The position numbers were made by a program, and so were the translations under genes. From Oopsacas minuta (lineage: Eukaryota > Animalia > Porifera): a stretch of 64,000 nucleotides of DNA. The stretch lies in NCBI GenBank assembly GCA_024704765.1, contig JAKMXF010000365.1, positions 310,001-374,000 of the forward strand. Direction: 5' to 3'. This document shows, in pieces, positions 45,858 through 55,200 of this stretch. The notes under the pieces are model-generated. The model was given only the letters and a program-made list of their open reading frames with translations. It had not been told where the DNA came from and did no database searches. Each line of letters starts with the position of its first letter. Within the stretch, counting starts at the first letter, position 1.

Positions 45858-46001
45858 CCCTTTACTCTATCATTATAGTGATATTATTGCAGTAAATATA
45901 TACTCGATGGACAAATTCAGAGCGTAATTGTTAAGAACCCACACTACCAATTTACATAGAGGGGACAATGTAAATCTAACCCAGTGATATCCTACATAAA
46001 C

Positions 46002-46946
46002 ATGCTAAAAAGTAGGAGCATAATCTTCAGAGGACATTCTAGTATCCGATCCATAAGGAGACCTTACGGTACTAGTAATGTGGCTAAGAATTGGAAATTG
46101 ATTCTAGGGTATACCGTATTCACGACCACATTTACTGGAGCAGCTCTAGTAGTTACTGCTGTAGGAGAATACGAGCTAGTCAGGAGACAAAGAGGATTTA
46201 TGAATAATCCAATGAACTCATATAGAAGGAAAATGTGGTTAGGACCGCCTGGACAAGAAGAGTTTAAGCTACGAGAGAGGATGGGAGACTGGTTCAGGTC
46301 CTTGGTACCTACACAGACGGCATTTCTAGTTATAATAGCAGTCAATATAGGAATACTTCTTGCTTGGAAAAGAGCAGTCTACAACAGAGAACTATCTAAC
46401 AAGATGTTTAAGTGGTTTACACTAAGAAATAGCTCTAAACCAATTACACTACTGACCTCTACCTTTAGTCACAGCTCTGCACTACACTTATTCATCAATA
46501 TGTACTGTTTATGGACATTCTTGCCAACAATGGACAGTAGTTATGGCCTTATAAGAACTTTAGCGATATTCTTCACAGGATGTGTGTGTTCCTCTTACGT
46601 AAATGTGTTATACAAACTGATAAGAGGGAGTACAATACCATCAGTAGGAGCTTCTGGTGGAATTTTGGCTGTAGTAACTGCAATGGCCGAAATCTTCCCA
46701 GATATAAGACTGACATTTATTATTCCAGTAGTAGCATTCGATGCTTCTACTGGAGTTATAGGGATAACAGCTCTTAGCGTGTGTGGGATAATATTCAAAA
46801 AGATATTACCTTCAATTGACCACGTGGCTCATTTAGCAGGAATAGCATATGGATATGTATGGCATAGATATATACACACATTCTATGTAACACACTCTAA
46901 AACAGTCAAAAGCAAATGGAGACAGTTCAGAGAAAGAAAATACTAA
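46002..46946 (+). CDS. PARL: Mitochondrial rhomboid protease PARL-like
   Basis: Arg-rich presequence, STFSHSSALHLFINMYCL, catalytic GASG and HVAHLAG. The ATG is at 46002; the ORF track uses a GTG start. Confidence 0.88.
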   Translation: MLKSRSIIFRGHSSIRSIRRPYGTSNVAKNWKLILGYTVFTTTFTGAALVVTAVGEYELVRRQRGFMNNPMNSYRRKMWLGPPGQEEFKLRERMGDWFRSLVPTQTAFLVIIAVNIGILLAWKRAVYNRELSNKMFKWFTLRNSSKPITLLTSTFSHSSALHLFINMYCLWTFLPTMDSSYGLIRTLAIFFTGCVCSSYVNVLYKLIRGSTIPSVGASGGILAVVTAMAEIFPDIRLTFIIPVVAFDASTGVIGITALSVCGIIFKKILPSIDHVAHLAGIAYGYVWHRYIHTFYVTHSKTVKSKWRQFRERKY

Positions 46947-47161
46947 GTCTTTGATCATTTGACTATTATTTGTATTCTTATATGAAAACTCGTATTATAT
47001 ATTTATCTCATACGTGAATGTACGCGTGCGAGACAGCATTATTGCTTTAGGTTAAAACAAGGAAATAGATTAAGAAGTAACTTGAAGGAATTGAGTTAAT
47101 TAATAAGTCTGATAAGTTTGCCATAATAATTGATAATTGTTAATGTGTTCTAAATTTTAAA

Positions 47162-48355
47162 TTAATAATTCGTTTTCTCAAAACAAAATATTGAAGGATT
47201 TAAAGTGGAGGCTTTTTTGTTTTGAGACAATTTCCTTTTCGTTACATTGTCAAAGGGAGTTGTCTTAGTTAGAGAGAACTTTTTATAGCTAGGCCGCAGG
47301 TTTATAGGTAGGGCTCCTTTATGGATTGTATTGAATTGTGACGATTTCTTTTCTGGACTTGAAATAGAAAGGGTTACAACATTAGAATTTAGAATTTCAG
47401 AGAAAGGATTGGATAGAGGATCAGGATTATCTTCAGCAAATACCTTAGGGCGTTTAGCTTTGGATTTACAATCTTGAGAAGGTGAGCTAGATATTGTAGC
47501 CTTTTCAGGGCATTGTATAGACTGCTTGAGTTTAAGGTGTTTACTTTTAAGATTAAAATATTCTGTGGAATACTGAAGAATTTTAGAGTTAGCTTTAACG
47601 ATGTCTTGTGCTTTCTGTGAATATTTCTTCTCAATTTCTCTCATCTCCTTAATAGCTTTCTCTTTCTCATTACGAATAGTTTGATTCAACTCTTTCAATT
47701 CATCGTAGTTCTTCTTTAAATGGAACAGAGATTGAGCTATAGATCTAACAGCAATAGGACCGTCACCATAACTCGCTACTAGGAATTCTATGTCAGTTTT
47801 ACCATTATCTATAACAGATTGTATGAGCTTGTAAACTTTAGCGGAATTCTCAAGCTCATGACAACGTTTTGCTGTCTGGTCATGTTCATCAGTAATTTTA
47901 TCGAACTGAGAATAAACTGATTTGAGTTCTCTGTTCAATTGAGATACAATTTTATGTTCTTCATGGTATTTCTTCTCGAATTTAGTCCGAGAACACCTGA
48001 GAGATTCGTTTTCATCTTTACAGTGATATAACTCCTCTCGTAAAATAGCGAGATCAGCTTCTTTCTCTGACAAATTATGTTCATATTCACTTATACGAGA
48101 ACGTAGTTTGCGTGGACTACATTCTGTATCAATAGCAGGTCCAGCTTCTTCATAGCCAGCTCCCAGCTCCCCTTCAGAATTCAGATACAGTTTAATAACA
48201 TCTGCTACTTTGGAGCATTTAGCTCTACACTGTGGACAAGTCTTATTCAGCTGCAGCCAATGCTTGAGACATTCAGAGTGGAAGATGTGACCGCATCTAG
48301 GTGCAGAGCAGTCAGACTTTATGTCATCTGTACAGATCAGACATATCAGATTCAT
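47162..48355 (-). CDS. TRAIP: RING-H2 plus coiled-coil E3 ligase, TRAIP-like
   Basis: N-terminal CLIC...CGHIFHSECLKHW...TCPQCR followed by VIKLYL, then a long coiled coil. Confidence 0.8.
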   Translation of the reverse strand: MNLICLICTDDIKSDCSAPRCGHIFHSECLKHWLQLNKTCPQCRAKCSKVADVIKLYLNSEGELGAGYEEAGPAIDTECSPRKLRSRISEYEHNLSEKEADLAILREELYHCKDENESLRCSRTKFEKKYHEEHKIVSQLNRELKSVYSQFDKITDEHDQTAKRCHELENSAKVYKLIQSVIDNGKTDIEFLVASYGDGPIAVRSIAQSLFHLKKNYDELKELNQTIRNEKEKAIKEMREIEKKYSQKAQDIVKANSKILQYSTEYFNLKSKHLKLKQSIQCPEKATISSSPSQDCKSKAKRPKVFAEDNPDPLSNPFSEILNSNVVTLSISSPEKKSSQFNTIHKGALPINLRPSYKKFSLTKTTPFDNVTKRKLSQNKKASTLNPSIFCFEKTNY

Positions 48356-48522
48356 TACTTATCTAATTTACACTATACCATTCAGTAAATATAGCATAAA
48401 ATGATATACACGCATTAGCAAAATTCATAATTGCAATTAAATAAAAAAATAGCTATGATATATGAAGGTAGATAAACCTAATCCAATTTCAAAAACTTAT
48501 ACTTCGTTACCTCTTATAAAGT

Positions 48523-50136
48523 TTACTTCTTCTTGTGGAGATGATTATTGAAAGCAATATCAAACACTTCTAAAACAAAGTCCATATCCTGTTTGGTAGC
48601 AGGGAAGGGAGGCTTGAGTCTGAGAGCTCCGTACATACCTCCCTTAGCTACTAGTACTCCCATGTCACGAAGATCTTCCATTATCTTCGCTAAGTTATCA
48701 GCAGGGAATGTATTTCTAGATTTCTTGTCAGTAGCCAACTCAATTGAAACCATGAATCCAATACCACGTACATCTCCCAAAAACTCATATCTAGAGGATC
48801 AATCAAAATTTACAAAGTAAAGTGACTACCCAAGGAATTCCCCAATCTTACTATGTAATATACAATTTATCAAATACAAACCTTTCTCTTAATTTCAACA
48901 ATCCACTGATTAAGTAGTTCCCCACTTCATGTACATGTGCTTGCATATTCTCTTCATCAATAACATCCAGGGTAGCAGACGCCACAGCACAAGAGAGAGC
49001 GTTCCCACCAAAAGTATTGAAGTGTAACGTTCTAGCTAAACAGCTGGCTATCTCTTTAGTAGTTATAACAGCTGCTATAGGGAATCCACTACCCATACCT
49101 TTTGCTGTTACAACAATATCAGGCATTACTCCCTGATACTCAAATCCCCAATAATGACTACCCAGTCTTCCGAACCCTGTCTGAACCTCATCAGAGATAC
49201 ACAGTCCTCCCCTTTTCCTCGTCATCTCAAACGCCCCCTTCATGTACCCTCTAGGAATGTGTACGCCTCCACCAGAACCCTGTATCGGTTCAATCATCAT
49301 CCCTGCTATCTTTGGTGGTAGTGAGTGTCTGAATGTTTCATCCAGCACCCCTAAGTAGTTCTCACTCGCCATACACTCCCCATCAGCACAATTACAGTCA
49401 CGGACGGTCTGAGCAGGACCATCTCTACAGTTCTTTCCACCCCACATCCCTCTGTACACGTCAGGATTCATAACACTGGTAATTCCAAATCCATTTGGTA
49501 TCTGTGAAATAAAATGTAAAAGTTTGTCCTTTGTCGTATTTTAGGAAATTTGGGAGTCACCTGTGGTTTCCAATGACCCATACCCAACATTCCTAGGTTT
49601 GCATTAGATATTCCATGATATGCATTATTAAGAGTCAGGTATTCCCATGCTCCAGTGTATAGTCTTGCCAAGGAGAGAGCCATTTCAACAGCTTCAGTCC
49701 CACAGTTAACTAGGTAAATGGTATCCAGATGTTTTGGGAGTTTGCTAGTTAGTTTCTCTAACAAACGAGTCATGTTTGGATGCATGTGCATGTTCGTACA
49801 ATGCCAGAGAGTATCAACTGCCTCCTTTAAGTGTTTTGATACTTTAGGATGACAATGTCCCACACTTATGGTAGATACTGAAGCTGTAAGATCAATGTAC
49901 TGCTTACCAGTATGATCCCATAGATACTGTTTATTGCCCTGAGTTATAAGCACAGGCTTTTTGTATAAAGTAAATATAGCTGGATTCAAATGCTTTTCTC
50001 TGATCCTCAAATGATGGTCGTAATCTAAGTTTACCTTCTTAGGAGATATTTCTGCATCTGGTATCTTAGGTACTCGCTGTAAGGGAGTAGTGCTATAGCT
50101 ATAACGAGCTGCATTCACGTAGAAAGAACGCAGCAT
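48523..50136 (-). CDS. AGXT2: Alanine-glyoxylate aminotransferase 2-like, copy A, 487 aa; introns 49560-49502 and 48881-48791
   Basis: Class III PLP aminotransferase: SVGHCHP, EPIQG, ISDEVQTGFGR, AKGMGSG, HFNTFGGN, MNPDVYRG; mitochondrial presequence. Confidence 0.92.
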
Positions 50137-50370
50137 AACTAAGATAGTATAATGAATAGCATATGTAGTTATTTACACTAAATCATAATGCCCACATATG
50201 GAAAAGTATTATTACTAATTACAGTATTAACAAGTCTTATTTGGTTGTAGCCAATGCTTCAGATCATTGATTGCAATGAAATTGAAAAATAGCTAAATAA
50301 ATATAGAGTATATGATATATTTATGTCGATAGACCTACCTATTTTCGAAAACTTATTAGTCGTATATGAT

Positions 50371-51984
50371 TTACTTCTTCCTCTGGAGATGATTATTGAA
50401 AGCAATATCAAACACTTCTAAAACAAAGTCCATATCCTGTTTGGTGGTAGGGAAAGGAGGCTTGATTCTGAGGGATGAGTACATACCTCCCTTAGCTACT
50501 AGTACTCCCATGTCACGACAGTCTTCCATTATCTTCATTAGATCGTTGGCAGGGAATGTATTTCTAGATTTCTTGTCAGTAGCCAACTCAATTGAAACCA
50601 TGAATCCAATACCACGTACATCTCCCAAAAACTCATATCTAGAAGATCAATCAAAATTTACAAAGTAAAGTGACTACCCAAGGAATTCCCCAATCTTACT
50701 ATGTAATATACAATTTATCAAATACAAACCTTTCTCTTAATTTCAACAATCCACTGATTAAGTAGTTCCCCACTTCATGTACATGTGCTTGCATATTCTC
50801 TTCATCAATAACATCCAGGGTAGCAGACGCCACAGCACAAGAGAGAGCGTTCCCACCAAAAGTATTGAAGTGTAACGTTCTAGCTAAACAGCTGGCTATC
50901 TCTTTAGTAGTTATAACAGCTGCTATAGGGAATCCACTACCCATACCTTTTGCTGTTACAACAATATCAGGCATTACTCCCTGATACTCAAATCCCCAAT
51001 AATGACTACCCAGTCTTCCGAACCCTGTCTGAACCTCATCAGAGATGCACAGTCCTCCCCTTTTCCTCGTCATCTCAAACGCCCCCTTCATGTACCCTCT
51101 AGGAATGTGTACGCCTCCACCAGCCCCCTGTATCGGCTCAATCATCATCCCTGCTATTTTTGGTGGTAGTGAGTGTCTGAATGTTTCATCCAGCACCCCT
51201 AAGTAGTTCTCACTCGCCATACACTCCCCATCAGCACAATTACAGTCACGGACGGTCTGAGCAGGACCATCTCTACAGTTCTTTCCACCCCACATCCCTC
51301 TGTACACGTCAGGATTCATAACACTGGTAATTCCAAATCCATTTGGTATCTGTGAAATAAAATGTAAAAGTTTGTCCTTTGTCGTATTTTAGGAAATTTG
51401 GGAGTCACCTGTGGTTTCCAAGGACCCATACCCAACATTCCTAGGTTTGCATTAGATATTCCATGATATGCATTATTAAGAGTCAGGTATTCCCATGCTC
51501 CAGTGTATAGCCTTGCCAAGGAGAGAGCCATCTCATTTGCCTCAGTCCCACTGTTAACTAGGTAGATAGTATCCAGATGTTTTGGGAGTTTGCTAGTTAG
51601 TTTTTCTAGCAAACGAGTCATGTTTGGATGTATATGCATGTTCGTACAATGCCAGAGAGTATCAACTGCCTCCTTTAAGTGTTTTGTAACTTTAGGATGA
51701 CAATGTCCCACACTTATAGTAGATATAGAAGCTGTAAGATCAATGTACTGCTTACCAGTATGATCCCATAGATACTGTTTATTGCCCTGAGTTATAAGCA
51801 GGGGCTTGCTGAACATAGGGAATATAGCTGGATTCAAATGCTTTTCTCTGATCCTCAAATGATGGTCATAATCTAAGTTTACCTTCTTAGGAGATATTTC
51901 TGCATCTGGTATCTTAGGTACTCGCTGTAAGGAAGTAGTGCTATAGCTATAACGAGCTGCATTCACGTAGAAAGAACGCAGCAT
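50371..51984 (-). CDS. AGXT2: Alanine-glyoxylate aminotransferase 2-like, copy B, 487 aa; introns 51408-51350 and 50729-50639
   Basis: Tandem duplicate offset by 1848 bp; it keeps the canonical VNSGTEANE motif. Confidence 0.92.
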
Positions 51985-52237
51985 AACTAGGTACCAGAAT
52001 TCATAGAATATAATTAAAACAATTAAATAATGAGGAAAATACGACGTATTAGAGATCTGAGTATATATGTACTGTTCTATGATGAAATAAACAAGTTATA
52101 AATTAGCATAGGAAAGCATAGGGAACCATGATTGACACCTAGAGGGCAGAGAAAACTGGGGGTTCCTAGATTTGTGTGATTAAAGGCTAGGACAGATTTA
52201 TCTGATGTTTATAAGCCTGATACTATTCTAGAGATTG

Positions 52238-55200
52238 TTATGTCTTGAGGATGCCCAACATGCGTAGCTTCATCCGAATTGAACCTAGTTCTTTCATCAC
52301 CTCCTCAAGTCGGAACTCTATGTCCTCTCTCTTCTGTCTGGACTGACGACTGGTACGTCCTGACCCTCTATTGAGAGCAGATTCTAACAGCTGTTTCTCA
52401 CTTTGAAGGTTGTCATACATTTCTTCTATTTCTGATACTTTGTCTAAACAGCTGGATCTTGAGCTCTTTGTATAAGGCTAATAGATAAGTTAGATTGCTT
52501 AAAGTACAATACTGTGCGTGTAAAGTAAATAATCACAAACCTGTGATTTGTGGAAAGGGTTCTGGTCTAATGACATCAACAATTTGTATTTCTCTTCATC
52601 AGATATACCATTTACTGTCCCTCCCTCATTCTCTTCTGTTATCCAAGTCATCCTCTTACGAGGCTCGGAATGTGGTGTCATCAGTTTGACACGTTCATGC
52701 TGAGCAGATGACATACTCTCCTTAGGGTATGTAATATCAAACGAACAGTTTAGCTTCTCTTCTATAGGAACACAGCTATAAATAGATCCATATATGTTAT
52801 AAAGTTGTACTTACTGTGAGATGAGGAGGTGTGTGGTCTCCTGTCATAATCTCCTCTATAGGGAGTAGTTTCTGACCGTCTAGACAAAGGTTCGGGATAA
52901 TCACTCTCTGAGTCAGAGGGCCAGACGTGAGCTGGGGCTGTTGTTCTAGTGCTGGAGGAAGATGGAGGGTCTGCTAGTATAGAACTCGTTCTAACCTCGT
53001 GAGGAACATCTGGAGATATGTCAGTCCAGTGACGGGAATAGCTAGAGGCAGAGGTACGTGGGTACGTGGATGGCGAGTCGATCTGAGGAGATGGGGGATG
53101 GTATTGGAACTTAGCAACATCTGACTGTCCCTGGAATGTAGTCTGCATTGAGCCGAGATTGTGGAGTCTAAATCAAATAAAAAATTCTCAAAAGTAGAAA
53201 TATAATTCAATCATCAAAACCTCACCTATTGTTAGTATGTTGTAAATGACGGATATCTTCCTCCTGTCGCATAATAGTCCGCTTATAGTTATCTTCCATA
53301 GACTCATACTTACTGACAGCAGCTTTAAGATTACCTAGCTCACTCTGTCTGTCTCGTGACTCCTGTTCTAGCTCTGAAATGAAAGTTTGTTTCCTTCCAA
53401 GTTCTGTCTGAGTCATACGAAATTCTTCTAGCAGGCGATCAAACTTATTTTTCTGATTATCATACTCCTCTCTGAGTCTGTTATACTCATCTTTAAACTT
53501 CTCATTCTCCTGATGGAAAATATGTTGTTATATTATGAATTAATTCAATTAATATCTACTGTATACCTGGATTAGCTGATTCCTTACTCGTAGCATATCC
53601 TGTTCGCGTCTCTGTTTATCAGCTTGTAACTCAGTCTGTATCCTCTGTAGCTCTTGGTTGTATAATTCTCTCTCTCGTATTCTATCCTTACCTAGTACAC
53701 TAGCATCCTGCTGAGACTGTACTAGAGCTGCTTCAGCAGACCTAGCTCTAGTGTCTAAGCTATTGATGAGAGCTTCTTGCTGACTCAGTTGTAGGCGTGA
53801 TGAGTCCAAACGTTCCTATAAAATAATTAGCTGATATGCAGCTGAGAGAGTATACTAGCTCAGTTTACCTGGAATACATTAATCATTTTATCAGCAGCAT
53901 CTAGCTTCTTGTATAGTTCACTAGTCTGGGAATTAGCTTCATCCTTTAGTTTACACTGTTGAGTGAGTCCCTCTACACGTCTCTCCAGCTGAGTTACATG
54001 CTGTCTAGAGCTTTCTAATTGTTGGTGTTGTAATTGGTTGTATTGTTCTAACTGACTATTCTTCTGATCTTGTTCACTTCTTATACGAATCATGCTATTT
54101 AACTCTTGCTCATATCTCTACAGTAGTATAAATTAATAATACAGCTATAAGCCATCATGTATGTAAGAGCTTACATGCTCCTTAGCTCCCATACTGTCCA
54201 CCTTATCCAGTAGAGTAGCGCATTTCTCTTCCAGCTGTATCTTAGCTGTCTGTAACATCTGTTCTCTCTTCTTCAACAGGTCTAACTGTCCGAGTATATC
54301 CTCTGATGGCTGTACAGTATTGTTATGTGTTCTTTGATGGAGTGTAGAGTTAGTGCTCTGATTAACTTGAGGTAGTTGGCAGAGAGAGTAATGTGGGTTG
54401 AGTGTAGGAGTGGGATTATCCTTTATCTATGATGTTATAAAATTAACTATGTATAATGTTGATATCATAGCATAACATACTGTATCTTGCTGGTCATTAT
54501 ATCCTATAGTCTGAGGAGTGGGAGTAGTAGTGAGAGAATGAGGTATTGGGGCTATCACCCCAGGAGGCAGCTGGTTAACTGTTTGAGGACCACACACTAA
54601 GTTAGGAGGATCAGATTGGGTAGATTGAGGGAGGGGGAATGTAGCTACATGTTGAGATGATGTGATCATTGTAGCCTAATAATAATACATGTATAATAGA
54701 TAATTAGTTTAATAGAATTAACTATAATAATTACTTGTGTAGGATAGTTATTCTCTCTAGCATTATAATCAGCTTGATTATCACTAATAGTAGGTTGAGA
54801 AGATAGGTGCATTAGGGAAGGAACAGATAAAGATTTAGAAAGAGATATTCTCTTCTCTTCGTTGTCCCTCCTGTATGGTATGGTGTGCATGTCATCCATC
54901 GTCATGACAGGCTGTTGACTGACAGGTTCTATACTGTATGTATTCAATTTGAAATTCTGCTTTTGAGTCTCATCCTGAGGGATAGCAAGTTGAGACTCAG
55001 AGGGATAAACAGCTGGTTCTTGTGTAATAATCAGCTGATTGAGGAGAGACAGGAACTGATCTGTCGACATGTTCCTGCTAGGAATTGTAGGGACAGGAGT
55101 AGGGGAGATAGGTAAGTGAGCGGGTCGCTCTTCTGTAGGAGAAGTGAGTACCTAATGAATATACTAAAATCCTATATAATACAAATACCCATCAATATAT

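What the first reader, a model, noticed from the sequence alone, without database searches (positions are those of the whole stretch)
48523..51984. AGXT2 tandem pair: homogenised introns, diverged flanks, amino-acid changes at substrate-pocket positions
Seen: intron 1 is identical and intron 2 differs at 1 of 91 bp, yet the flanks diverge right outside the ATG and stop. I count 23 amino-acid differences, in clusters: IFTLYKK/IFPMFSK, ASVS/ASIS, MHMH/MHIH, NCGTEAV/NSGTEAN, IQGS/IQGA, DNLA/NDLM and YGALRL/YSSLRI. Synonymous changes cluster around the same spots, and the IQG change is a small island in long identical sequence. Known: in class III aminotransferases the residue after IQG corresponds to OAT Glu235 (the specificity switch), the LRxxPP Arg to OAT Arg413, and the N-terminal segments line the pocket. 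Inference: neofunctionalisation under ongoing gene conversion; copy A has lost the canonical NSGxEAN.
Basis: partly seen in the sequence, partly recalled or inferred. Interest (0 to 1): 0.75.

Follow-up and report, generated by a model that had tools for sequence, protein, structure and literature searches.

The report
Sponge AGXT2 tandem duplicate, partly homogenised
A glass-sponge genome carries a real, lineage-specific side-by-side duplicate of the mitochondrial aminotransferase gene AGXT2 whose middle is kept nearly identical by gene conversion while one copy changes amino acids about ten times faster, partly at substrate-pocket positions: a clean but ordinary kind of gene-family evolution.

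Summary
Two head-to-tail, three-exon class III aminotransferase genes lie 1848 bp apart on the minus strand. Intron 1 (59 nt) is identical and intron 2 differs at 1 of 91 nt. There are 56 coding differences and 23 amino-acid differences.

- **Origin.** Three related sponge contigs have one copy in the same synteny, so the duplication is lineage-specific. It ran from about 7 nt upstream of the ATG into the downstream RING gene, whose decayed relic sits in the 234-bp spacer.
- **Gene conversion: well supported.** Silent divergence is 0.19 at the gene ends and about 0.21 in the flank relics, against 0.02 in the centre plus introns (P=1e-9). Identical tracts of 402 and 263 nt exist.
- **Asymmetry.** 17 changes are derived in downstream copy A and 4 in B. 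Omega is about 0.08 for B and the background, and about 1 for A (lower bound about 0.25).
- **Pocket positions.** Three of the five positions that delimit the ornithine aminotransferase substrate site differ between the copies (P about 9e-4).

Adaptive neofunctionalisation is plausible but not shown, because relaxed constraint fits almost as well. No structure model was made, since the protein is spliced. The scan has already reported similar gene-conversion pairs elsewhere in this genome.

The parts
48523..50136 (-). Copy A (downstream copy). It has three exons (49561-50136, 48882-49501, 48523-48790) and two introns (49502-49560, 48791-48881). It encodes 487 aa and is the fast-evolving copy.
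   Evidence: Pfam PF00202 on all three exons, GT..AG introns; 17 of 21 polarisable replacements are derived in A.
50371..51984 (-). Copy B (upstream copy). It has three exons (51409-51984, 50730-51349, 50371-50638) and two introns (51350-51408, 50639-50729). It encodes 487 aa and is the conservative copy that keeps the ancestral 5' flank.
   Evidence: omega on the B branch is 0.08, the same as the background.
50137..50370 (-). The 234-bp spacer between B's stop and A's ATG. It is the decayed copy of the ancestral 3' flank plus the start of the RING gene. Relics lie at 50294-50356 and 50220-50268.
   Evidence: 79% over 62 nt against 48438-48500 (score 47, null 18.4 +/- 2.8). 87% over 38 nt against RING codons at 48236-48273 (score 45, null 16.9 +/- 2.2); repeat family D2.
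48797..49198 (-). The longest tract identical between A and B (402 nt; the B counterpart is +1848). It covers most of intron 2 and the 3' half of exon 2, and is read as a recent gene-conversion tract.
   Evidence: none of 20000 permutations reached 402 (null mean 127, maximum 347).
49311..49573 (-). The second identical tract (263 nt). It covers the 5' part of exon 2, all of intron 1 and the end of exon 1.
49274..49276 (-). Codon 268 (Ser in A, Ala in B and in all outgroups). It aligns to OAT Glu235. It lies in a 35-nt island of 4 differences inside the homogenised centre.
49960..49971 (-). Codons 56-59 (TLYK in A, PMFS in B), in the N-terminal loop. Codon 57 aligns to OAT Tyr55. The loop varies among glass sponges, and A's version equals a motif widespread in the family.
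49876..49878 (-). Codon 87 (Val in A; Ile in B, in the outgroups and in 31 of 34 homologues). It aligns to OAT Tyr85, a specificity determinant.
   Evidence: (ungapped alignment to OAT 56-97)
49687..49704 (-). Codons 145-150 (CGTEAV in A, SGTEAN in B). This is the PLP-phosphate loop region, and G146 aligns to OAT Gly142.
48616..48630 (-). Codons 453-457 around the conserved Arg456 (GALRL in A, SSLRI in B). SS is derived in B and L457 is derived in A.
47162..48355 (-). The downstream intact RING-finger gene (397 aa, single exon). Its 5' part was included in the duplicated unit.
   Evidence: same neighbour in three related species
52166..52184 (-). A conserved non-coding element upstream of copy B only. 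It sits about 180 nt upstream of the ATG.
   Evidence: 18 nt are invariant in B and three outgroups whose silent sites are saturated. It is absent from the spacer upstream of A. Only 3 exact copies of a 15-mer of it occur in the 61-Mb genome.

Best explanation
**Duplication.** In this lineage, after its split from three related sponges, a roughly 2-kb segment was duplicated head to tail. The segment ran from about 7 nt upstream of the AGXT2 start codon to inside the first ~45 codons of the downstream RING gene. The upstream copy B kept the ancestral 5' region. The downstream copy A kept the intact RING neighbour but now has the decayed RING/3'-flank relic as its 5' flank.

**Gene conversion.** Non-allelic gene conversion later copied the middle of the gene (about 0.8 kb: exon 2, both introns, the end of exon 1) from one copy to the other. 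This happened in at least one recent event and probably two. That part shows about 1.5-2% silent divergence, against about 20% at the gene ends and in the flank relics.

**Divergence.** B evolves like the single-copy orthologues (omega about 0.08). A has taken most of the amino-acid changes (omega about 1). Several hit positions that line the substrate and PLP site, yet there is no stop, frameshift or loss of a catalytic residue.

**What is shown and what is inferred.**
- The duplication and the conversion are shown; I hold them at about 0.9.
- That A is still a working enzyme with a loosened or slightly retuned substrate pocket is inferred. I hold that at roughly 0.55.
- The confidence given for this explanation is for the whole statement, including that last step.
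For: **Tandem pair and counts**
-.
- The genome holds only these two copies, plus a paralogue at 37% identity.

**Lineage-specific origin**
- Single copy in conserved synteny (ACBP-like gene, AGXT2, RING, rhomboid) in three related contigs, with identical intron positions.
- Spacer relics of the 3' flank and of RING codons.

**Gene conversion**
- dS is 0.17 at the 5' end and 0.27 at the 3' end, against 0.023 in the centre.
- Silent differences in the ends against centre plus introns give Fisher P=1.3e-9. Identical tracts of 402 and 263 nt give P<5e-5.
- Introns cannot be aligned between species, so their identity between A and B is not due to constraint.

**Asymmetry**
- 17 replacements derived in A against 4 in B, binomial P=0.007.
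- Branch codon model: omega background 0.08, B 0.08, A 0.8-1.8. One-ratio model against a free A branch gives P about 2e-6. The profile lower bound for omega A is about 0.25.

**Signs that A still works**
- The ORF is intact and has no indel over 1614 nt, while the flank relics carry several indels.
- Replacements derived in A are mildly conservative (P about 0.05-0.07).

**Pocket mapping**
- Positions 57, 87 and 268 align to OAT Tyr55, Tyr85 and Glu235.
- These belong to the five residues that delimit the OAT substrate site (PMC13327489).
- 3 of the 5 differ between the copies, hypergeometric P=9e-4.
Against: - Omega on A is not significantly above 1 and not different from 1.
- The test of omega A against omega B reaches only P=0.07, because silent changes cannot be polarised: dS to the outgroups is above 1.5.
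- A lost the conserved upstream element and may be poorly expressed or not expressed.
- A replaced the very conserved S145, N150 and I87, which could be decay rather than tuning.
- Several changes lie in the presequence, in a C-terminal-domain helix and in the tail. These are probably not in the pocket.
- No 3D model was made, so pocket assignment rests on sequence alignment to OAT.
- There is no GC-biased-conversion signal.
Confidence: 0.55

Rival explanations
1. Copy A has acquired a new substrate specificity by positive selection. The small islands of difference, each a replacement with adjacent silent changes, persist because conversion tracts that erase them are selected against.
For: - Silent differences cluster around replacements.
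- The S268 island sits inside the homogenised centre.
- 13 changes derived in A hit sites that are invariant in B and three distant orthologues.
- 3 of 5 OAT substrate-delimiting positions differ.
- In OAT itself, Ser against Ala at position 235 changes catalytic efficiency about 100-fold (PMC13327489).
- A's TLYK at 56-59 matches a motif widespread in the family.
Against: - Omega A is not above 1.
- The islands are only 10-25 nt wide, narrower than typical conversion tracts. Multinucleotide mutation events give the same pattern and are known to mimic positive selection (my own knowledge: Schrider et al. 2011; Venkat et al. 2018).
- The mean silent divergence of the ends (0.19) equals that of the flank relics (about 0.21), so the ends need not have been converted at all.
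- No expression or enzyme data exist.
Confidence: 0.3
2. Copy A is a redundant, weakly expressed or silent duplicate drifting under relaxed constraint. Occasional conversion from B repairs its middle. There is no new function, and the pocket hits are chance plus site variability.
For: - Omega A is about 1.
- A lacks the ancestral 5' flank and the conserved upstream element.
- A lost the highly conserved S145, N150 and I87.
- Positions 18, 56-58, 188 and 433 also vary among the orthologues.
Against: - There is no stop and no indel in 1614 nt, although the neighbouring neutral relics carry several indels.
- Replacements are somewhat conservative.
- Enrichment at substrate-delimiting positions has P about 1e-3, or about 0.01 for the changes derived in A alone (and my arithmetic).
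Confidence: 0.35
3. The duplication is ancient and predates the split from the three related species, which later lost one copy. Pervasive conversion makes the pair look young, and the islands are what remains of the old divergence.
For: - Local divergence in the islands is high: 9 differences in 24 nt at codons 55-62, and silent pS about 0.4 near replacements.
- In the islands B is closer to the outgroups than to A.
Against: - Three independent single-copy loci would need losses that restore exact synteny.
- The spacer relics are still 79-87% identical to their source, whereas intergenic DNA and introns cannot be aligned between species.
- No second AGXT2-type protein from those samples appeared in the word search.
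Confidence: 0.05
4. This is an assembly artefact: two haplotypes of one gene placed in tandem.
For: The published assembly that matches these metrics was scaffolded and gap-filled (PMC10280926).
Against: - There are no N runs in 46000-54000.
- The spacer is a decayed, indel-ridden relic of the downstream flank and RING gene, not a second near-identical haplotype copy.
- Divergence is mosaic, from 0 to about 20%, unlike alleles.
- No further copies or haplotigs exist in the assembly.
Confidence: 0.02

Closest known systems
AGXT2 (alanine-glyoxylate aminotransferase 2 / (R)-3-amino-2-methylpropionate-pyruvate transaminase), class III PLP aminotransferase
   Same: - Pfam PF00202 matches all exons.
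- The nearest named homologues are AGXT2.
- The PLP-lysine and Asp/Gln motifs are conserved.
- The N-terminal presequence is basic and free of acidic residues, as expected for a mitochondrial protein.
- The Cys-rich insert between the two Pfam-matched halves is shared with the sponge orthologues.
   Different: - The gene is duplicated in tandem here, but single-copy in three related sponges.
- Glass-sponge copies lack the family's usual Tyr at the OAT-Tyr55 position.
- Copy A carries C145, V150, V87 and S268 in place of the conserved S, N, I and A.
Ornithine aminotransferase (human OAT, PDB 1OAT/2OAT; Y85I mutant 2BYJ)
   Same: - It has the same fold family.
- There is an ungapped alignment over OAT 56-97 and one of equal length over 220-363.
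- Positions 57, 87, 268 and 456 correspond to OAT Tyr55, Tyr85, Glu235 and Arg413.
   Different: - It is a different subfamily, with about 30-40% identity in the aligned stretches.
- The sponge enzymes have L/M, V/I and S/A where OAT has Tyr, Tyr and Glu, so the OAT 'Glu235 switch' cannot operate.
Ethanolamine-phosphate phospho-lyase (ETNPPL/AGXT2L1, PDB 6TOR)
   Same: It is the best solved-structure match for exons 1 and 2 and the second best for exon 3.
   Different: - It lacks the Cys-rich insert and the presequence.
- The genome has a separate paralogue at 37% identity (contig C221) that matches 6TOR over nearly its full length at E=4e-77.
Concerted evolution of tandem duplicates with unconverted islands (for example human RHD/RHCE, opsins, globins; Innan 2003, Teshima and Innan 2004; cited from my own knowledge)
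   Same: - The identity is mosaic.
- Introns are homogenised.
- The ends and flanks are older.
- Small islands of difference carry the replacements.
   Different: - Only one pair of sequences and no population data are available, so selection against conversion is not demonstrated.
- The islands are very narrow.

Membership tests
Class III aminotransferase (Pfam PF00202) | A profile match above the curated cut-off | tested here: met
   exon 1 scores 90.8 bits, exon 2 scores 150.8 bits and exon 3 scores 31.7 bits (cut-off 30.5). Together they cover profile positions 10-400 of 403.
Class III aminotransferase (Pfam PF00202) | A PLP-binding Lys, and the Asp/Gln that hold the pyridine ring and O3' | tested here: met
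   D296 and Q299 align to OAT Asp263 and Gln266. K326, in the motif VTAKGMGSG, aligns to the lysine of 6TOR (MGKPMGNG). All three are identical in A and B.
AGXT2 orthologue group | The closest named relatives are AGXT2, not another class III subfamily | tested here: met
   The named hits are 'alanine--glyoxylate aminotransferase 2, mitochondrial' (44% identity) and JGI 'alanine-glyoxylate transaminase/(R)-3-amino-2-methylpropionate-pyruvate transaminase'. No full-length phylogeny against ETNPPL/PHYKPL was made.
AGXT2 orthologue group | A mitochondrial presequence | tested here: inconclusive
   The first 26 residues contain no acidic residue and are rich in Arg, Ser, Tyr and Thr. No targeting predictor was available.
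AGXT2 orthologue group | Alanine:glyoxylate, BAIB:pyruvate or ADMA transaminase activity | not testable with these tools
   This needs a recombinant enzyme assay.
Non-allelic gene conversion between tandem duplicates | Silent-site divergence that is strongly heterogeneous along the pair, with identical tracts longer than chance allows | tested here: met
   dS is 0.19 in the ends against 0.023 in the centre. Fisher P=1.3e-9. The 402-nt tract exceeded every one of 20000 permutations.
Non-allelic gene conversion between tandem duplicates | Homogenised sequence that includes unconstrained DNA (introns) | tested here: met
   1 difference in 150 intron nt between A and B, while the same introns cannot be aligned between species.
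Non-allelic gene conversion between tandem duplicates | Independent evidence that the duplication is older than the identical tract | tested here: met
   the flank and RING relics are 79-87% identical and carry indels (JC distance about 0.21).
Non-allelic gene conversion between tandem duplicates | GC-biased signature in the converted tract | tested here: not met
   GC3 is 0.37 in the centre and 0.38-0.40 in the ends. This feature is not obligatory.
Neofunctionalised duplicate | Asymmetric acceleration of one copy | tested here: met
   17 against 4 replacements. Omega is about 1 for A and 0.08 for B.
Neofunctionalised duplicate | Positive selection (omega above 1, or an MK excess) on the fast branch | tested here: inconclusive
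   the profile likelihood is flat from omega 0.5 to 20. Omega=1 is not rejected.
Neofunctionalised duplicate | Changes at specificity-determining positions | tested here: met
   3 of 5 OAT substrate-delimiting positions differ. This rests on sequence alignment only, not on a 3D model.
Neofunctionalised duplicate | Both copies expressed and biochemically distinct | not testable with these tools
   No transcriptome or enzyme data were within reach.

The most novel reading that the evidence does not exclude
Copy A is an expressed aminotransferase with a shifted amine-donor or acceptor range. Its few specificity-determining residues (57, 87, 145/150, 268, 457) are actively protected by selection against erasure by gene conversion from copy B. 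That would make this a natural, minimal map of AGXT2 specificity determinants.
Probability: 0.25. Interest if true: 0.5.

Novelty: new member of a known kind. Interest (0 to 1): 0.3.

Why it matters
AGXT2 is a promiscuous enzyme with no solved structure among the PDB matches here, and its specificity determinants are poorly mapped. A natural pair differing at only 23 residues, three of them at positions that delimit the substrate site in ornithine aminotransferase, would make a convenient swap-mutant system. That holds only if both enzymes are active and differ.

For genome evolution the pair is a clean worked example in a little-studied animal class. The duplication boundaries, a decayed neighbour-gene relic, conversion tracts and asymmetric divergence can all be read from one locus with three outgroups.

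It does not reveal a new kind of system.

Tried and rejected
1. **A third copy as donor of A's odd patches.**
   - A DNA search of the genome finds only A and B.
   - A protein search adds only a paralogue at 37% identity on contig C221 and a weaker one on C33.
   - The 30-nt patch around codons 55-62 is unique in the genome at up to 3 mismatches.
   - C221 carries different residues at the 23 sites.
2. **Homology between the spacer and B's upstream region.** There is none: score 23 against a null of 22.8. So the 5' edge of homology is the duplication breakpoint, not decay.
3. **The last 83 nt of the spacer against the RING gene.** Not significant.
4. **GC-biased conversion signal.** None.
5. 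**Polarising silent changes.** Abandoned, because dS to all outgroups is saturated at above 1.5.
6. **The assembly-artefact and ancient-duplication readings.** Considered and rated low; see the rival explanations.
8. **Structure prediction and fold search.** Not run, because the protein exists only as a spliced model.
Full report
**What is there.** On the minus strand lie two head-to-tail genes: copy A at 48523-50136 and copy B at 50371-51984.
- At a fixed offset of 1848 nt they align without a gap, from about 11 nt past the stop codon to about 7 nt upstream of the ATG. Identity collapses outside that.
- Each has three exons and two GT..AG introns of 59 and 91 nt (phases 0 and 2).
- The CDS is 1464 nt (487 aa).
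- Intron 1 is identical and intron 2 has one difference. The coding sequence has 56 nucleotide and 23 amino-acid differences.
- There are no N runs in the region.

**What the genes are.**
- All three exons match Pfam PF00202, class III aminotransferase.
- The nearest named homologues of exon 1 are AGXT2 proteins.
- Among solved structures, human ETNPPL (6TOR) is the best match for exons 1 and 2 and second for exon 3, followed by OAT, acetylornithine aminotransferases and dialkylglycine decarboxylase.
- The PLP lysine and the Asp/Gln of the cofactor site lie in the part that is identical between the copies.

**Handling of the spliced model.**
- Exons were searched one by one by reference.
- The joined protein was never given to a search or fold tool, so no structure model exists.
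- The joined CDS was built only inside scripts, from the session's files, for counting.

**Whose genome.**
- The assembly has 61.46 Mb in 365 contigs.
- The metrics match the published Oopsacas minuta assembly: 365 scaffolds, about 36% G+C (PMC10280926). This is an inference, not proof.
- It is not human DNA.

**The duplication is lineage-specific and its edges can be read.**
- The word search returned three exon-1 proteins at 72-77% identity.
- Their contigs (L003, L004, L005) show one AGXT2 gene each, in the same neighbourhood: an ACBP-like gene, AGXT2, a RING-finger gene, and a rhomboid gene on the other strand. Intron positions are the same and the CDS has the same ungapped length.
- The window's own genome holds only A and B, plus a paralogue at 37% identity on another contig.
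- Upstream of B, but not of A, lies an 18-nt element that is invariant in B and all three outgroups.
- The 234-bp spacer upstream of A is instead a decayed copy of what lies downstream of A.
  - Spacer 50294-50356 matches 48438-48500 at 79%.
  - Spacer 50230-50268 matches codons about 28-40 of the RING gene at 87%.
  - The two matches are colinear, with a deletion of about 146 nt between them. Both are far above shuffled controls.
- So the duplicated unit ran from just upstream of the ATG into the RING gene. B kept the old promoter side and A kept the intact RING neighbour.

**Gene conversion.**
- Nei-Gojobori silent divergence between A and B is 0.17 in codons 1-158 and 0.27 in codons 429-487. 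It is 0.023 in codons 159-428.
- The flank relics give a distance of about 0.21.
- Silent differences in the ends, against the centre plus introns, give Fisher P=1.3e-9.
- The longest identical tracts are 402 nt (48797-49198) and 263 nt (49311-49573). No permutation out of 20000 reached 402.
- The same introns cannot be aligned between species, and silent sites between species are saturated. Constraint therefore cannot explain the identity.
- A recent transfer of the middle 0.8 kb between the copies is the only reasonable reading. Two tracts separated by the small island at codons 256-268 are likely.
- No GC-bias signature is seen.
- Earlier notes of this scan report conversion between other paralogue pairs in this genome. 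I did not test those.

**Asymmetry.**
- With the three outgroups, 17 of the 23 replacements are derived in A and 4 in B; 2 are ambiguous (binomial P=0.007).
- 13 of the changes derived in A hit sites that are invariant in B and all outgroups.
- My own branch codon model (F3x4, tree ((A,B),(L003,L004),L005)) gave the following.

| Quantity | Result |
|---|---|
| Omega, background | 0.08 |
| Omega, B branch | 0.08 |
| Omega, A branch | 0.8-1.8 |
| One-ratio model against a free A branch | rejected, P about 2e-6 |
| Omega A = omega B | P=0.07 |
| Omega A = 1 | not rejected |
| Profile lower bound for omega A | about 0.25 |

- A has no stop codon or indel, although the adjacent relics carry several indels.
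- A's replacements are slightly more conservative than random (mean BLOSUM62 0.29 against -0.33, P about 0.05-0.07).

**Pocket positions.**
- An ungapped alignment places residues 58-99 on OAT 56-97, so V/I87 corresponds to Tyr85. The best hit for that segment is the OAT Y85I mutant.
- The longer alignment starts at 56 against OAT 54, so L/M57 corresponds to Tyr55.
- Exon 2 aligns with equal length to OAT 220-363, so S/A268 corresponds to Glu235.
- A review of OAT defines the substrate site as delimited by Tyr55, Tyr85, Arg180, Glu235 and Arg413. It reports that Y85I alters specificity, and that E235S and E235A differ about 100-fold in efficiency (PMC13327489).
- Three of these five positions differ between A and B, against 23 of 487 overall (P=9e-4).
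- C/S145 sits next to the glycine that aligns to OAT Gly142 of the phosphate cup.
- G453S, A454S and L457I flank the conserved Arg456.
- Other differences lie in the presequence, a helix of the small domain and the C-terminal tail (residues 18, 430-433, 439, 484-485). These are probably not in the pocket.
- In 34 wider homologues, I87 (31 of 34), S145 (31) and N150 (26) are strongly conserved, so A is the odd one there.
- At 56-59, however, A's TLYK equals a motif widespread in the family, while all other glass-sponge sequences deviate and vary.

**Clustering of silent changes.**
- It fits selection-protected islands in a sea of conversion. It fits multinucleotide mutation events equally well.
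- The islands are very narrow, and the mean silent divergence of the ends already equals that of the flanks, so I cannot decide between the two.

**Verdict.**
- The duplication and the gene conversion are solid.
- The asymmetry and the pocket hits are real.
- Adaptive neofunctionalisation is not demonstrated, and relaxed constraint on a copy that lost its native upstream region is nearly as good an explanation.
- This is a new example of a well-known kind of gene-pair evolution.

Noticed in passing
window 52166-52184 (-); L003 9818-9836, L004 9723-9741, L005 9818-9836: An 18-nt non-coding element (CTTTAATCACACAAATCT) is invariant between the window and three related sponges whose silent sites are saturated. 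It lies 50-90 nt after the upstream gene's stop and 180-280 nt before the AGXT2 ATG. A 15-mer of it occurs only 3 times in the 61-Mb genome. Its function is unknown; it could be a promoter element, a 3'-end signal or a small RNA.
   Followed up: partly
window 48882-49501 (-), codons about 214-235; same in L003-L005: A Cys-rich insert (KNCRDGPAQTVRDCNCADGEC) lies between the two Pfam-matched halves. It is conserved in all glass-sponge AGXT2 genes. It is absent from the bacterial-type homologues P0012 and P0014 and from the genome's own paralogue on contig C221. It could be a metal or disulfide site.
   Followed up: no
G000 contig C221:146348-147841 (L008 757-2250, +): A single-exon, roughly 498-aa AGXT2-family paralogue, 37% identical to exon 2 of A/B. 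It matches human ETNPPL (6TOR) over nearly its full length at E=4e-77. It is probably the sponge's AGXT2-like (phospho-lyase type) gene.
   Followed up: partly
window 48523-51984 against L003-L005: Third-codon-position G+C of this gene is 0.37-0.40 in the window's species but 0.46-0.57 in the three related species. This points to a marked compositional shift in this lineage.
   Followed up: no
window 47162-52420 (-): The ACBP-like gene, AGXT2-B, AGXT2-A and the RING gene are all on the same strand. The gaps between the two AGXT2 copies and between copy A and the RING gene are only 234 and 167 nt. The tight AGXT2-to-RING spacing (124-295 nt) is conserved in the three relatives.
   Followed up: no
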